This document shows positions 3,156 through 58,900 of a stretch of 64,000 nucleotides of DNA, piece by piece (position 1 is the stretch's first letter; every line of letters begins with the position of its first letter). The translations under genes and the position numbers were made by a program. This DNA is from Octopus sinensis (taxonomy: Eukaryota), in contig NC_043004.1 in assembly GCF_006345805.1 (NCBI RefSeq), positions 35,278,001-35,342,000 on the forward strand. Direction: 5' to 3'. A model generated the notes under the pieces. It had not been told where the DNA came from. It searched no databases and saw nothing but the letters and a program-made list of their open reading frames with translations.

Positions 3156-4117
3156 CATTATTATTATTATTATTGCAGACTTTATTCAGCATCTTTCTCG
3201 TTCTATAGTATTTATTGTGTTTTCCTCTCAAAGCAGACCAAGCTTAGGTAGTTTAGAATATTAGAAACACATATTTACAGGATATTTACTTTATATGAAC
3301 AGAACAATGACAGGTATCCCACACATAAAACAATGATAAAATAACACTGTTGCCCATCTAATGGTGCTTCCATTGCTACTAAAGTCAACCCATGGAAACT
3401 TTAACCAGAGACAAAGATAGCTTCAATGGGGGGGAAAAATCTTCATTTCAATATTTACTTTTGCAAAGAAATAACTTGGAAAAATAATGCCATCATTAGT
3501 TTTTGTTTGTTTGGGTTTTTTTTCCCCTTAATGCAAGGTAAATATTTATTCAGGATTTAGAGATAATTGAATCGATTCCCAGTCTATTACTCCTACTTAA
3601 TTTAACAACCATCTACTGACGAAATTGTAGCTGGGATTCCAAGAATGGTGTTTCATGCTGCTACCTTCTCAGAAATGGCCATGAAACAATAATTTTTTGT
3701 TTTTGTTTCTTTATAACTTGATTTCTTTCCTGCTGATGTTGGTTAGAATATAGAGTTTCATGAGATGGCAGAAAGCAACAACTGCAGGCTGTGTGTGAGT
3801 TCTTGGAAACTTTTTTCTGCAAAAGTCATTGATCAGTAAATTAATTTAAGGCATTGTTTAATCCGTCATGGCCATATCAGTGGTGGATATTTGGTTAATA
3901 GGTTCAGTAGGCTTCTGAGAGACGTACGTGTGTGTGTGTGTGTGTGCATCTCTATGTGTGTGTTTCTGCATGTACATTTGTGTTTGTGTGTATACATGTA
4001 CATACAAACACAGAAGGTGCTGCTCCAGCTAGAGCCCACTCCCAACTGTGAAAGCCAAAAGAAACTATAGAAAGAACTAAAGGATGTGTATATGTTTGTA
4101 CATATACATGCACATCA

Positions 4118-5538: not shown

Positions 5539-6149
5539 ATCCTCTCAAGTTGCTAGATGGTAGGTGTTTGCTCCCCTACTTGCAATATATCGGACACCGG
5601 TTGTGTTGTTAACCAGCTAGAGGAAGTGTTGCGCTGGGGTTAAAGAAGAGTAGTAACGTCATTCCATACAGAACAGCCACAGTGAAGTGGCAACAAGCAT
5701 TACTTTCCAGTAGAGTTACCACTTGCATCCCTCATAGAGGTTTTAGAACCAGCTACTTTGCTTCGTACATACACCAATTTCCATATAAACACACACATAG
5801 AAATACCCATAAATGTAACTCAAACACAGACACACACACAAACACATGCGAACACAAAATACACAAAAACTAAATATTATAAACTAAACACTGACTTATT
5901 ATTATAACATATTTTTTGCTCAGTGATTGTTCTGCTACAAATTTAGCCGAAGCTAAATTTTGTTGGCAGAAATACACAGTCAGTTTTGACTTCAATCAAT
6001 TTATACTTATGATATCAAACTGCGAAGACTGACAGGTAAATTGGATCTGTGCTGGATTTCTAACCAGAAAACCTGAGACACTGATCTTTTGTTACAAGCG
6101 TTTACTAATAACAACATTATTACACAGAGAAAAGACAAACAACACTGAC

Positions 6150-53634: not shown

Positions 53635-53701
53635 CAAATTCATCAGATTCTGTCAAACTGTCCAACTCATGCTCATATGGAAAACAGATGTAAAATGGTA
53701 A

Positions 53702-53735
<34 letters not shown>

Positions 53736-54017
53736 GTCATTGTTAGCAGTTCATATATCTGGAAAAGATAATTATAAAACCCAGCCAACATAAAAGGGCA
53801 GCATGGTAATTTATTTATAAATATATATGCATATCCAAACAAATTATATCAATGATCAATTAGAGCAGACATGTCTGTTCATTGGTGTGTATGTGTGCAT
53901 GTGTGTGTGTGTGTGTGTTTTTGTGGTGTGTGTGTGTGTGTATCTAATAGTGTATATAATGAATGTCTTGTTGGGTGTATAAGTATATATGTATATGTAT
54001 ATTTTCGGTAGTGTATG

Positions 54018-54215
54018 GCATGTAAAAAGCACCCACTACACTCTCAGAGTGGTTGACGTTAGCAAGAGCATCCAAGTGTAGAAATTTTGCTGGATCAGAT
54101 TGGAGCCTGGTGCAGCCTTCTGGGTTGCCAGCCCTCAGTCAAACCCTCTGACCCATGCCAGCATGGAAAGCAGATGTCAAACAGCAACACTGACGATGAT
54201 GATAATGATGATGAT
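54018..54215 (+). mobile_element. Family A element whose (GAT)n tail abuts the RPB1 pseudogene
   Basis: ggcatgtaaaaagcacccactacactctc..ctgacgatgatgataatgatgatgat runs directly into gttggttctaattctccat. Confidence 0.8.
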
Positions 54216-54222
54216 GTTGGTT

Positions 54223-55433
54223 CTAATTCTCCATAAGCCTGTGTTTTTCATCATCAGCTGAGTTGTAAATCGGACAGGCTGGAGAAGGTTTTGGTAAACT
54301 AGGAAAATATGTAGGACTGCATGGAGAATATTTAGGACTTGTGGAGCTGTATGTAGGGCTAGTAGGAGAGTATTTGGGACTTGATCTTGGACTGGTCAGG
54401 CAATATCTGGGGCTGGTTGAGCTGAAAGTAAGACTGGTTCGTGAGTATCTAGAAGTCAAACTATACTGAGGAGACGTTGAGCTGTACTCAGGAGAAGTAA
54501 GACTGTATCTTGGTGAAGCAGGAGAATAAGTTGATGTGTGTATTTTGGACTGATGGGAGAGTATGCAGGGCTTGTAGGAGAAAATTTCAGAGAAGAAAGA
54601 GAATACTGAGAAGTAGGGGAGTAAGATGGTGATGTAGGGCTGTGTTTCAGACTGCTGGTGGGGGGAACTCAGACTGCTAGGACTATAGTTGAGGCTGGTG
54701 GGAGAGTATGAAGGACTAGTAGGAGAATAAGATGGGCTAGTTGGAGAATATGGAGGGCTGGTAGCACTGTAATTAGGAGAGGAAGGCGAGTAAATGGGGC
54801 TTGCTGGACTATAACTAGGGCTAGTCGGAGAATAAGATGGACTTATTGGGGAATAAGAAGGACTGGTTGGAGAGTTAGAAGAAGTGGGGCTGTAGCTAGG
54901 ACTAGTTGGAGATAACAAGGGGGTAGTAGGATTAAAACTAGGATTGGTAGGAGAGTATGATGTACTAGTTGGGGAGTAGGAAGGGCTGGTTGGAGAATGA
55001 GGGTGAAGTTGTGCTATAAGAAGGACAGATAGATGAGTAAGATGGTGATGTTGGGCTATAGCTTAGTGAAGATGGAGAATAGCTTGGGCTGTTTGGTGTC
55101 ATAGCTGGTGACACAGGTACATAAACAAGAGATTTAGGTAAATAACTTGGAGACAGTGCTCCAGCAGGGCTTGGAATGTAAGCACTGCCTGGCAATGACA
55201 GAGATCCACTGAGAGAAGACTAGTATGTGTTGTAGCCAGGACTGCAACCACTTTCACTTGCAGCTGATGGTGAAAAGCCAGCATCACCAAGTGTCATTCC
55301 ACTTCCAATATGAGGGGACCAAGAACCAATATAATCAGGTGTGGCATGTGTGAGCCATGGTGTCACCTGTGGTGACATTCCAGTCACAAGACTTCCACCA
55401 GATCCAAAGAACATTCCAGTGCTCACACCCATA
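54223..55433 (-). pseudogene. POLR2A: Decayed copy of the RNA polymerase II largest subunit C-terminal region (linker plus roughly 40-45 YSPTSPS-type heptads)
   Basis: The minus strand reads [61 protein letters not shown], then heptad repeats to ..[11 protein letters not shown]. This matches the RPB1 linker and CTD. There is an in-frame TAG at 55220-55222, frameshifts near 54998, 54665 and 54535, and many degenerate heptads. Confidence 0.93.
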
Positions 55434-55484
55434 CTGATGATGATAAGAAAGAAACATGAGGTCATGGAGAATTAAGACCCACAT
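55434..55484 (+). pseudogene. POLR2A: Second, oppositely oriented copy of the RPB1 extreme C-terminus and stop codon (..DDDKKET[E]VMEN*)
   Basis: ctgatgatgataagaaagaaacatgaggtcatggagaattaagacccacat aligns with the reverse complement of 54214-54256 (ctgatgatgaaaaacacaggcttatggagaattagaaccaacat). The outer 21 nt match at 18/21, including an exact atggagaatta. Confidence 0.7.
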
Positions 55485-55665
55485 ACACAACAGAAACTAT
55501 ACAAATATGTATGTACTTATACACACTGTTAGATACACACACACGCACGCACACGCACACACACACACACCAATACAGAGACATCGCTGAGAAAGAAGCA
55601 CACTCTAAAGTATTAGAGCAGCAAATTTTTAGAAAGTTAACTTTTAACTTCCTGGAACCTGGTGC

Positions 55666-55960
55666 CAGTGGTGGACTGGGTCTAAAAATATTGGTTGCCA
55701 GGAGACTAAGGAGGCCAACCTGCAACTACAGTGCTATGGTTTAATTAATTTTTTTTTTTTTTGTTAAAAGTATTTTTTTTCAACTATCTACAAACACAGC
55801 CAGGCTGAAATAATTAATGCATTCTTCCAGGAGTGAATAAAGAACTCTCAAACTTGAAGGGATGGGCGGGCCCCTTAGATACTAATATGGGCCCTCATAT
55901 ATGGATTCTAATGGCACAGGGGCCCACTTGTCATCAGGCAAGCTGACCAGTCCATCACTG
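55666..55960. mobile_element. hAT-type MITE inserted into a SINE fragment
   Basis: TIRs cagtggtggactgggtc and gaccagtccatcactg; diverged 8 bp TSD cctggtgc and cttagtgc. The flanks rejoin into a GAT-tailed SINE. Confidence 0.75.
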
Positions 55961-58900
55961 CTTAGTGCAACCCTCTGGCTTATCACGTTTAGTCAACCTG
56001 TCTAACCCATGCCAGCATGGAAGGCAAACGTTAAGTGATGATGATGATGATGATGATATATACATATAATATATATTTGTGTAAATAAGTATATACATGT
56101 ATACTTAGGTGTGCTTGAGTTCGATGACAACTACAACCTGTTTTTTTCCTCCACTTAAGATTGATAGTGTCAGAAACAAAACTTTTATGTTGAAATATAT
56201 ATCTTGAAATTCGGTCTGAGAACATATTAACTGACATATAGTAACGACACAATTACAGATGATGAGTTTAATATTTGTGAAAGCTTATATTAGTGGAGAG
56301 AAGAGAATTCAGTTGAAAAATAAACACATGCCTTCAAAAACTGTATTTAATGAAGTGAGTCAGATGTGATTTTGAAATATTTATTTACAAGTTACAGACT
56401 TATAATGTTTCAATGGCTTCAAGTTATTCACCCAAAATTTAATATTTTAAACCAGAAATGGTTCTGAATTATGTTTTATAACAAGAAATATGTTTTTATT
56501 TTTCCTTTCTATTTTTTCTGTGATGCTGGAGAATATAATTCAAATTGATAAAACCATGATATTTTCATAGATTGAAAAATGGGTAAGGAACTTAAAAATT
56601 GAAAATTCATTTTGAATTTTGGTTTTATTAAATTTCAGTTTGAAAATATTCACAGCACAGCTTTTTGTCTGCATTTTTTAGTATTTAATGCTTTTTTTTT
56701 TTTTAACATTTTGAAATTTCTAAGTCAGAATTTTCTAAGTAATATATATTTTTATCTAAAATACATCAATTTGATAGACTTAGTCAATGTGAATATCAAA
56801 ATATAACAGCATGGCCTTAGCCAGCAGAAAGAAGCAAGAGTAGGGGTAGAAGGAGTTTGGCAAACCATGGTAAAAGTTGAATCACACCTTTCTCAGTTAA
56901 AACAAAAATCTGGTAAGGACTGAGCTGCCATCTTATAAGAATCTTTTACACTACTTTTGGACTATTTTGGTATTAAGTTGCTGCAGAAGCTTTCTCAAGC
57001 TTACAAAAAGATTTCCTGCTTTTCATATCTGATAGATGTTCCCGCTTTAGGAATATTTAGTCTGTTTAGAAAATACTGGCGTCAGAAATAAATATTTCTC
57101 TGCTGATGGTTTAACGGAAAGTAATTGAAATGGAGTAGGAAGTGATTTGTCTGTTCTGATTTGTGCTGTGTGATTTTTCATATATTTCCCTATATAGTGG
57201 CATTTCGGCCATCTTTATGTTCTGAGTTCAAATGTTATTGAAGTTGGCTGTGTCTTTCACCCTTCCAGGGTCAACGAAATAAGTACCTGTGAGTACTGGA
57301 GGTTGATGAAATCGACTAATCGCGACCCCACAAAAAATTCAGGTCTTGTTAAGAAAGAATACACTGAGGTCATTATTACATGGAGCTAGCTGGAATTTGA
57401 TGAGTAGGGTTAGATGAAGCATGTTTGAAATAACCTCATTATCACAAGGTACACCAGCACATGTTGTAGCACTAACACTCTAAAAAGGGGTCAAGGCTTT
57501 GGTATTTCAATATGTGGGTTAATTTTGTTTGAAGATACCCCAATCTTGAGTGGAGAATAAAAGTGGTGCCGGTAAAACTTAGTTGCATCATTATCTTAAG
57601 AAATACAAGAACATAACTGTAGAGACCATTCAAATGGAGGAAGATCCTTCAAATGGAGGAAGGTGGCTGTAGTCTTATGTATTTTACAGAGAAGCAAAAG
57701 GCACATTATTATATTTCAGTGGTTGATGAAATGAATGAAGGTGATGAGGTACCAATGAATATCTGGAAATGTGTTTCAAGTAAAGCTGACACATACACAC
57801 TTGAATGTGTACATATTTCAGCCTCATATTTATTGTGACTGCTTCATAATACAGTGAAGAAACAAGCTTTCAGAAGTAGAAATTGAGTTTCCTATTGATG
57901 TGTCATCTACAAGTCAGAGTAAAATGGAGGTTGTGTTGACCAATAAACCTTTATCTATAGTTGAAGTTACCTAATATGGAATTATAAAAATTGAAAAGAC
58001 ATCACTATCATTTCTGGTTTGTGCTGTAATTACTGGTATATTTCAACATACTCCAAAATATGTTCCAACTTACTACAGTGTGGGCCATGTTGGAATGTTT
58101 AGAATTAGTTAACAAAAATTTCTTTACTCCGTTATTTCTCTCAGTCTCTGCTGAACGCTTCTGCTAAGTCTGTTAAACACAAATCTATCTATAAAATATA
58201 TGACAAAGTAGATTTATTAATAAGTCTTTTCAGAAAGTGTCTTCCAACTAAATCCACCTTCCTCTGTATTAAGAAGTAAATTTTCAAATGTTGAATCTAC
58301 TTCACTCATTTCATACAATTCATTGCAAAACTATTAAATGGTATTTTTTCTTTTTAACACAAGCCAGGATTACTGATTGTGGTTGTCTTGCATAATTCCG
58401 AAATTGAATGCTTCCTTCTAAAATGCATTTAACTCTATCATTGAAATTCAACTTACTTAAATAGAAAATAAGAAAATTCTTCAAGAAAAATTACTATTTT
58501 TACTATTTTAACATTTCTATGTATTACTACCTCAATATATCAGAATGGTAACTGATTAAATATTAGAAATAGTTGAATATTCTACATATTGAGAGTTAAA
58601 CTCTCAATTAAACATTTGTGAAACTGAAATTTCTTTAGACATAAATATATTATGTTTACACTAAATTTCTTTAGACATAAGTATATTATGTTTACATTTA
58701 TTGTCAGGCAAGAATAACAAACATATCATCAGAAATCAGTGGTGAAATATAAACCTCTTACAAGCTTATAAGTGAATTTTTGTTACAGAGTAAAACTAAC
58801 TTTGGGAATGAGTAACATAGGTTTCGCCGTCTCCCTATCTCAAGCCTGACCAAGTTTGTTTCTAGTCTCTAGGAATGTGTTATTCTTTTATATGGAGACA

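What the first reader, a model, noticed from the sequence alone, without database searches (positions are those of the whole stretch)
54214..55650. RPB1 CTD copy has the architecture of a twin-primed, 5'-inverted retrocopy
Seen: a 1.2 kb antisense segment running from just past the RPB1 stop codon (left edge, 54214) back to the linker (55433). It is joined head-to-head to a sense segment that restarts ~45-50 nt before that same point (55434-55484, DDDKKET[E]VMEN*TAA) and continues into non-coding sequence. Established: this layout (inverted upstream part, then a sense 3' part, with a small overlap duplication) is the signature of twin priming during L1-type target-primed reverse transcription. 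Inference: an RPB1 mRNA was retrotransposed in trans, possibly primed from the (GAT)n SINE tail on its left (atg/cat microhomology), and 55476-~55650 is the start of the parent 3' UTR. As far as I know, twin-primed processed pseudogenes are documented mainly in mammals, so a cephalopod case would be notable. No poly(A) or TSD is visible; later SINE and MITE insertions cover the right end.
Basis: partly seen in the sequence, partly recalled or inferred. Interest (0 to 1): 0.8.

Follow-up and report, generated by a model that had tools for sequence, protein, structure and literature searches.

The report
Hairpin-shaped dead copy of RPB1 tail
This is an old, broken copy of the last exon and the start of the 3'UTR of the RNA polymerase II largest-subunit gene, and it carries a roughly 155-base inverted repeat of its own end, so it looks like a DNA strand that folded back and copied itself rather than a textbook twin-primed retrocopy.

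Summary
The sequence features are real. The key geometric premise of the reading is wrong.

- **Parent and copy.** The parent is an intact, intron-containing RPB1 gene on contig C9. Window 54214-55434 (minus strand) copies its last exon with 9.7% substitutions and six frame-breaking deletions. Window 55435-55589 (plus strand) copies the last ~27 coding bases plus ~116 nt of the parent's 3'UTR.
- **The left edge is not an edge.** The antisense copy does not stop at 54214. A 5'-truncated SINE (54016-54213) was inserted into it later. The antisense 3'UTR resumes at 54015 and runs to ~53743, which is 238 nt past the parent's stop codon.
- **Consequence for twin priming.** The sense piece lies wholly inside the range of the antisense piece. 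This makes a ~155-nt inverted repeat around a 1.2-kb loop, not a ~50-nt overlap. In twin-priming terms the overlap is 265 nt, against a median of 12 bp in human L1.
- **No 3' hallmarks.** There is no poly(A). Neither piece reaches the parent's transcript end, which lies about 1.8 kb past the stop.
- **No intron test.** The copy lies inside one exon and ends within 0-7 nt of that exon's first base.
- **Age of the arms.** The two arms are as diverged from each other as from the parent, so one event made both.

Best reading: a self-primed (snap-back) copy, probably a cDNA made at an AT-rich SINE tail. A DNA-level template-switch insertion is not excluded. It is ordinary pseudogene biology with an unusual shape.

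The parts
53640..53739 (+). Left flank. It holds the 3' end of an older SINE-like element (83% to the SINE consensus over 48 nt), then an (AT)17 run at 53700-53733, then 'ctgtca'. This is the likely target or priming site of the insertion.
53743..54015 (-). Antisense copy of the parent's 3'UTR, from stop+25 to stop+238 (L014 3965-4178). It includes the (GT)n at about 53885-53945. It also holds a 16-nt segment (about 53866-53885) that is shared only with the sense arm and is absent from the parent.
54016..54213 (+). 5'-truncated SINE with a (GAT)n tail, 91% identical to the family consensus. It was inserted into the copy after the copy formed. Removing it restores colinearity with the parent (gtagtgta|tgttggttc vs parent gtagtgtg|tgttggtcc).
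54214..55434 (-). Antisense copy of the parent's last exon (linker plus CTD heptads) with 24 nt of 3'UTR. It has 9.7% substitutions spread evenly over codon positions. All ten gaps are deletions in the copy, and six of them break the frame. The parent's stop aligns to 54239-54241.
55421..55436 (.). Head-to-head junction. 'cccatactg' fits both the antisense exon start (parent cccatacctg) and the sense C-terminal region (parent cccaactg). There are two possible parsings. In one, the antisense piece ends at exon base 1 and carries a 6-nt insertion. In the other, it ends at exon base +7 and the sense piece starts about 9 nt earlier.
55435..55589 (+). Sense copy of the last ~27 coding nt, the stop (now tga at 55457-55459) and ~116 nt of 3'UTR (L014 3913-4056), plus the 16-nt segment shared with the antisense arm. 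This is the right arm of the inverted repeat.
55590..56057 (+). An older SINE copy (78% to consensus) at 55590-55665 and 55961-56057, with a (GAT)7 tail. It is split by a MITE at 55666-55960, whose terminal inverted repeats are cagtggtggactgg and ccagtccatcactg. This element bounds the sense arm.

Best explanation
**What it is.** A roughly 1.6-kb piece of RPB1 sequence was copied once into an AT-rich SINE tail on another chromosome. It comprises the last exon plus the first ~240 nt of a ~1.8-kb 3'UTR. It has since decayed as a pseudogene.

**Proposed mechanism.**
1. A 3' end at the (AT)n target primed on the AU-rich part of the 3'UTR.
2. Synthesis ran antisense through the CTD exon to its first bases.
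3. The free 3' end of the new strand (...GCCCATAC-3') folded back and annealed by an 8-9-nt microhomology to its own template-complement about 27 nt before the stop.
4. It then copied itself for about 155 nt and was joined to the other side of the break.

The result is a stem (about 155 nt) and loop (about 1.2 kb) arrangement. This is the 'snap-back' class of 5' junction, not classical twin priming. Two SINEs and a MITE arrived separately.

**Shown:** the anatomy, the parentage, the secondary nature of the SINE at 54016-54213, the equal age of the two arms, and the microhomology.

**Inferred:** that the template was RNA, that a LINE reverse transcriptase did the copying, and the direction of synthesis.
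For: - **Parentage and extent.** Searches give the matches. The parent is an intact intron-containing gene.
- **The antisense piece continues beyond the SINE.** Colinearity is restored when the SINE is removed.
- **The sense piece lies inside the range of the antisense piece**.
- **Equal age of the arms.** Pairwise identities over the shared arm are parent-R 82.7%, parent-L 86.0% and R-L 84.9%. Site patterns are 14, 14 and 17. This gives a star tree, so the arms date from the copying event.
- **Microhomology at the junction.** CCCA(T)AC(C)TG fits both sides.
- **No intron sequence.** The copy ends within 0-7 nt of the exon's first base, and no other parent DNA is in the window.
- **Setting.** The copy sits on a different chromosome from the parent and next to an (AT)17 SINE tail.
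- **Precedent.** For R2-type reverse transcriptase insertions, a cDNA 3' end that primes synthesis on its own cDNA before 5' joining is a described junction class, seen especially after full-length cDNA (PMC11371274). Self-annealing 3' overhangs at L1-made breaks give inverted duplications (bioRxiv 10.1101/2024.12.14.628481).
Against: - **No positive mark of an RNA template.** There is no poly(A) and no recognisable target-site duplication. Intron loss cannot be scored.
- **The 3' end is internal to the transcript.** The copy stops 238 nt past the stop codon, while contigs of transcriptome-sized runs extend about 1.8 kb past it. Priming would therefore have been internal, or on an unproven proximal poly(A) site.
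- **No A-to-I editing footprint.** A>G changes number 11 and T>C changes number 11.
- **An overlapping twin priming on two RNA molecules would leave the same sequence.** So would a DNA-level template switch.
- **The exon-start coincidence is less exact than it first looks.** The junction is ambiguous over about 13 nt.
Confidence: 0.5

Rival explanations
1. DNA-level templated insertion. A broken end at the AT-rich target was repaired by microhomology-mediated, replication-type copying from the RPB1 locus on C9. One template or strand switch occurred at the CCCA.AC.TG microhomology (MMBIR/FoSTeS style, or fold-back of a resected 3' overhang). No RNA was involved.
For: - It produces the same architecture and the same microhomology junction.
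- There is no poly(A) and no target-site duplication.
- The 3' end of the copy is internal to the transcript.
- The microhomology is 2 nt longer if the unspliced sequence (intron cag) was the template.
Against: - The copy stops within 0-7 nt of the exon's first base. It carries no unambiguous intron base, although 1.3 kb of intron lies next to it in the parent. A DNA template gives no reason for that.
- Small gene fragments dispersed to another chromosome next to SINE tails are more typical of reverse-transcriptase activity (my own knowledge).
Confidence: 0.25
2. Twin priming in a loose sense. Two separately primed cDNAs of RPB1 RNA, one from each target strand, were joined by microhomology. 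One orientation is the reader's. In the other, the long piece is the non-inverted one. The two cDNAs overlap by more than 150 nt, which needs strand displacement or two RNA molecules.
For: - There are two opposed pieces of one transcript region, joined by microhomology.
- Processed pseudogenes with 5' inversions exist, at 13% in one human set (PMC12016303).
Against: - The overlap is 265 nt between the start of the inverted piece and the end of the non-inverted piece, against a median of 12 bp (quartiles 4-17).
- The short piece lies wholly inside the long one, rather than upstream or downstream of it.
- There is no poly(A) on either piece.
- The proposed primer, the SINE tail at 54200-54213, postdates the copy.
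Confidence: 0.15
3. Two steps. A simple copy of the RPB1 3' end, retro or DNA in origin, arrived first. A later local rearrangement then created the short inverted arm. Candidates are an inversion with staggered breaks or a palindrome followed by an asymmetric deletion.
For: - Such rearrangements are known to leave inverted duplications at breakpoints (my own knowledge).
- With only about 110 comparable sites, a lag of up to about a third of the copy's age cannot be excluded.
Against: - The arms are no closer to each other (84.9%) than to the parent (82.7% and 86.0%).
- Branch lengths since the arm split (about 0.06 and 0.09) match the exon's total decay (0.097).
- It needs more events, and it still leaves the exon-start end unexplained.
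Confidence: 0.1

Closest known systems
Twin-primed (5'-inverted) L1 insertions and processed pseudogenes (Ostertag & Kazazian 2001 model; survey in PMC12016303)
   Same: Two opposed pieces of one transcript region lie side by side and are joined with microhomology. The event inserted away from the parent gene.
   Different: - The overlap is 265 nt, not about 12 bp.
- The short piece is nested inside the long one.
- There is no poly(A), no target-site duplication and no consensus endonuclease site.
- The long piece ends internally in the 3'UTR.
Snap-back 5' junctions of non-LTR retroelement insertions (R2-protein-mediated PRINT insertions, PMC11371274)
   Same: The end of the copy that corresponds to the cDNA 3' end is joined to the complement of an internal part of the same copy. 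This gives an inverted repeat with a loop. In that study such events were noted especially after full-length cDNA.
   Different: - Those cases are experimental, site-specific rDNA insertions in human cells with a known RNA template.
- Here the template and the enzyme are inferred, and the locus is about 10% decayed.
Inverted duplications or fold-backs from self-annealing 3' overhangs at LINE-1-induced breaks (bioRxiv 10.1101/2024.12.14.628481), and MMBIR-type templated insertions
   Same: A single-stranded 3' end pairs with itself or a nearby template through a few bases and is extended. This gives an inverted duplication at an insertion site.
   Different: - Those cases mostly duplicate flanking genomic DNA.
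- Here the duplicated material is the inserted gene fragment itself, and the flanks are not duplicated.

Membership tests
Twin-primed 5'-inverted retrocopy | An inverted piece and a non-inverted piece of the same RNA lie adjacent to each other. | tested here: met
   Both pieces match the C9 RPB1 last exon and 3'UTR on opposite strands.
Twin-primed 5'-inverted retrocopy | The inverted piece comes from RNA upstream of the non-inverted piece, and the breakpoints nearly abut (overlap or gap of a few to tens of bp). | tested here: not met
   The inverted piece covers L014 2583-4178 and the non-inverted piece covers 3913-4056. The smaller is fully nested, and the overlap is 265 nt. The median overlap in human L1 is 12 bp.
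Twin-primed 5'-inverted retrocopy | The non-inverted piece ends at the transcript's poly(A) tail. | tested here: not met
   The sense piece ends at 55589 against a SINE with no A-run. Contigs of transcriptome-sized runs carry the parent's UTR to L014 5713-5804. The distal UTR is absent from the window.
Twin-primed 5'-inverted retrocopy | Target-site duplication and an endonuclease-type target. | tested here: inconclusive
   No direct repeat was found between the flanks. The left flank is an (AT)17 run, and the right flank is masked by a SINE and a MITE.
Processed pseudogene (retrocopy) | The parent's introns are absent across exon junctions. | not testable with these tools
   The copy lies within the single last exon, L002 1502-2859 plus UTR. 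It ends 0-7 nt from the exon start and has no unambiguous intron base.
Processed pseudogene (retrocopy) | A 3' poly(A) at the mRNA's cleavage site. | tested here: not met
   The antisense copy ends at L014 about 4178, which is 63 nt past the first AATAAA and about 1.6 kb before the contig-supported end. It is followed by (AT)17, not by a T-run.
Snap-back (self-primed) cDNA or fold-back insertion | The end of the copy is joined to the complement of an internal site of the same copy, with microhomology at the join. | tested here: met
   The exon-start end is joined to the sense sequence that begins about 27 nt before the stop. CCCA(T)AC(C)TG is shared by both sides.
Snap-back (self-primed) cDNA or fold-back insertion | Both arms were made in the same event. 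| tested here: met
   The three-way comparison is star-like: 82.7%, 86.0% and 84.9% identity, with site patterns of 14, 14 and 17. The resolution is limited, at about 110 sites.
Snap-back (self-primed) cDNA or fold-back insertion | The first strand was reverse-transcribed from RNA. | not testable with these tools
   The only indirect hints are the end at the exon start and the SINE-tail target. There is no editing footprint.
RNA polymerase II largest subunit CTD (Pfam PF05001) | YSPTSPS heptad repeats in an open frame that continues from the rest of RPB1. | tested here: not met
   Heptads are recognisable (PF05001, E=7.5e-11). The frame is broken by six deletions that are not multiples of 3 and by stops. 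No other RPB1 exon is in the window. It is a pseudogene fragment.

The most novel reading that the evidence does not exclude
A poly(A)-independent, LINE-made retrocopy of an mRNA 3' fragment in a cephalopod. It would have been primed internally from an (AT)n SINE tail, and its cDNA would have run to an RNA 5' end at, or a few bases inside, the last exon's 3' splice site before snapping back on itself. If true, it would be a natural fossil of snap-back TPRT outside mammals and laboratory systems. It would also hint that a 3'-exon RNA species, not mature full-length mRNA, served as the template.
Probability: 0.25. Interest if true: 0.45.

Novelty: new member of a known kind. Interest (0 to 1): 0.25.

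Why it matters
The locus has little biological consequence. It is a dead, single-copy fragment with no open frame.

Its value is mechanistic and cautionary:
- A later SINE insertion can make a large inverted repeat look like the small-overlap signature of twin priming.
- It adds a candidate natural example of a fold-back or snap-back insertion in a mollusc genome rich in SINEs and non-L1 LINEs.
- If more such fragments exist and their ends pile up at exon starts, that would bear on which RNAs cephalopod LINE enzymes can copy in trans.

Tried and rejected
- **Continuation of the sense arm beyond the right-hand SINE (56059-56135).** It resembles the parent's AATAAA region, but 8% of background tiles in this window score as well, and BLAST does not rank it. 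I did not count it.
- **Other parent DNA in the window.** I searched for intron, upstream exons and distal 3'UTR. None was found.
- **RNA-editing footprint as a mark of an RNA template.** A>G changes (11) equal T>C changes (11). I attribute the excess of C>T (47) over G>A (13) to the C-rich coding strand of the heptad repeats, which I judged from the sequence and did not count.
- **A shared stem between the two arms.** The first MAFFT alignment suggested arm-specific shared characters. Most were misalignment around a 22-nt deletion in the sense arm. Only the 16-nt segment next to the (CA)n is truly shared, and a deletion in the parent explains it.
- **C9002 as an alternative parent.** It holds a divergent RPB1-like gene with only 67-75% nucleotide identity to the C9 gene, so it is rejected.
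- **The SINE at 54016-54213 as primer.** Rejected, because it interrupts the copy.
- **Literature and earlier notes.** The Ostertag & Kazazian paper is not held. There are no earlier notes near this place.
- **Reads.** I laid contigs only on the parent's 3'UTR and downstream DNA, not on the conserved CTD.

Full report
**1. What is in the sequence**

On the minus strand, 54214-55434 reads as degenerate YSPTSPS heptads preceded by the RPB1 linker. The reading switches among all three frames and contains stops. Its longest ORF matches Pfam PF05001.

A whole-genome search finds one strong relative, G000:C9:91562582-91563964, on the opposite strand (E=0). The next stretch of the window, 55428-55570, matches C9:91563910-91564054 on the same strand (E=1.2e-15). 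They derive from one place in the genome, and they overlap in parent coordinates.

**2. The parent**

The C9 locus has an intact 451-codon ORF: linker plus heptads, ending ...DDDDKET*. The ORF starts right after a good acceptor (tttatttacag|GT ATG GGC). About 1.3 kb upstream lies the previous exon, ending ...GPGMLGTG with a gtaag donor. Rpb1 domain 7 lies in two further exons about 7 kb upstream. This is the functional, intron-containing RPB1 gene, and linker, CTD and 3'UTR form a single last exon.

I laid contigs from four transcriptome-sized runs of three closely related organisms. Whether these runs are RNA is the tool's guess. They cover the 3'UTR from the stop (L014 3940) to L014 5713-5804 and nothing in 5822-5920. 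The breaks fall only at microsatellites. AATAAA motifs sit at about 5795 and 5812. The 3'UTR is therefore about 1.8 kb long.

**3. The left edge is a SINE insertion, not the end of the copy**

Positions 54016-54213 are a 5'-truncated member of an abundant SINE family with a (GAT)n tail, 91% identical to a consensus of 29 genomic copies. To its left, the antisense copy resumes:
- 53926-53995 matches L014 3979-4048 (83%).
- 53743-53908 matches L014 4023-4178 (82-85%, E=8e-37 and 7e-30).

Across the SINE the parent's sequence is fully accounted for (gtagtgta|SINE|tgttggttc vs parent gtagtgtg|tgttggtcc). The antisense copy (L) thus spans the parent from the first base of the last exon to 238 nt past the stop. 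The SINE is a later insertion, so its tail cannot have primed the event.

**4. The sense piece**

R runs from 55435 to 55589. It covers L014 3913-4056 plus a 16-nt segment (ccaatacagagacatcg) that is also present in L (ccaatgaacagacatgt) but absent from today's parent, next to the (CA)n.

At 55590 a second, more diverged SINE begins (78% to consensus). That SINE is itself split by a MITE at 55666-55960. A possible resumption of R beyond this SINE is not significant.

R therefore lies entirely within the range of L. Together they form an inverted repeat with arms of about 155 nt around a loop of about 1.2 kb.

**5. The junction**

The 9-mer cccatactg at 55428-55436 fits both the antisense exon start (parent cccatacctg) and the sense C-terminal region (parent cccaactg). 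This is an 8-9-nt microhomology. There are two parsings:
- L ends at exon base 1 and carries a 6-nt insertion.
- L ends at exon base +7 and R starts about 9 nt earlier.

In both parsings L ends within 0-7 nt of the exon's first base and contains no unambiguous intron base. No other part of the parent (intron, upstream exons, distal UTR) is present in the window.

**6. Age and relation of the pieces**

In the exon, L differs from the parent at 9.7% of 1191 aligned sites. The differences are spread evenly over codon positions (42/31/42). All ten gaps are deletions in L, and six of them break the frame. This is neutral decay.

Over the shared arm, identities are parent-R 82.7%, parent-L 86.0% and R-L 84.9%. 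Site patterns are 14, 14 and 17. The tree is star-like, and the two arms are as old as the copy. A much later duplication is excluded. A modest lag is not, given about 110 comparable sites.

**7. What this does to the twin-priming reading**

Twin priming predicts an inverted piece from RNA just upstream of a non-inverted piece that runs to the poly(A). In 287 human L1 cases, nearly half have breakpoints within 20 bp, and overlaps have a median of 12 bp (PMC12016303).

Here the result is different:
- The overlap is 265 nt.
- The short piece is nested in the long one.
- Neither piece reaches the transcript end.
- There is no poly(A) or recognisable target-site duplication.

A looser twin priming on two RNA molecules cannot be excluded, but it needs more assumptions.

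**8. Best mechanism**

The plus strand reads as follows: left flank, antisense (stop+238 back to the exon start), sense (stop-27 to about stop+116), right flank. This is what a single nascent strand gives in four steps:
1. It is primed from the left flank.
2. It copies RPB1 sequence up to the exon start.
3. It folds back and anneals by its last bases to its own complement 27 nt before the stop.
4. It extends on itself.

This snap-back class of 5' junction has been described for R2-protein-mediated insertions, especially after full-length cDNA (PMC11371274). Self-annealing 3' overhangs at L1-made breaks give inverted duplications.

I favour an RNA template at about 60-65% overall, for three reasons:
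- The copy stops at the exon start.
- It lies on another chromosome.
- It sits against an (AT)17 SINE tail.

No positive RNA mark exists. A DNA-level template-switch repair copying from the C9 locus would leave the same sequence.

**9. Unexplained**

I cannot say why the copy ends at, or within 7 nt of, the exon's first base. A random end would fall there with a chance of roughly 0.3% for this junction, or a few percent for any junction of the mRNA. That figure is my own estimate. Options are coincidence, an RNA whose 5' end lies at the 3' splice site, or a pause there. None is tested.

**10. Verdict**

A retro-type origin with opposed pieces remains possible. Classical twin priming with a 50-nt overlap, primed from that SINE, is refuted. 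This is a decayed, fold-back-shaped RPB1 fragment pseudogene, a new member of a known kind and of low to moderate interest.

I did not check it.

Noticed in passing
G000:C9002:258000-264000 (locus L045): A second RPB1-like gene sits on an unplaced 500-kb scaffold. Rpb1 domain 7 lies in one 379-codon open frame with no intron, and there is a CTD-like repeat. It shares only 67-75% nucleotide identity with the C9 gene. GC is 40%, against 36% for the C9 region. It could be a divergent paralogue or DNA of another organism in the assembly.
   Followed up: partly
window 55666-55960: A 295-bp MITE with 14-nt terminal inverted repeats (cagtggtggactgg / ccagtccatcactg) is inserted into the older SINE. 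It has a diverged target-site duplication of about 7-8 bp (ctggtgc / cttagtgc).
   Followed up: no
L014 4166 (= G000:C9:91564166), parent 3'UTR: Contigs of two of the three related organisms (runs X3 and X4) carry a 19-nt insertion here (TAATCAATGAATACACACA) that the assembly and organism A lack. This shows that the parent's 3'UTR evolves by small indels.
   Followed up: no
loci L016-L044, consensus: The abundant (GAT)n-tailed SINE has a conserved core of about 175 nt. Upstream of the core are tandem units of about 70 nt (gcacgtaaaaagcacc...ccggtggcac). Both copies next to the RPB1 fragment start at nearly the same point, at the last 'gtaaaaagcacc'.
   Followed up: partly
L014 3941-5804 (G000:C9:91563941-91565804): The RPB1 3'UTR appears to be about 1.8 kb long and holds (CA)n and long (TA)n microsatellites. 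Contig coverage stops at 5713 in organisms B and C and at 5791-5804 in organism A.
   Followed up: partly
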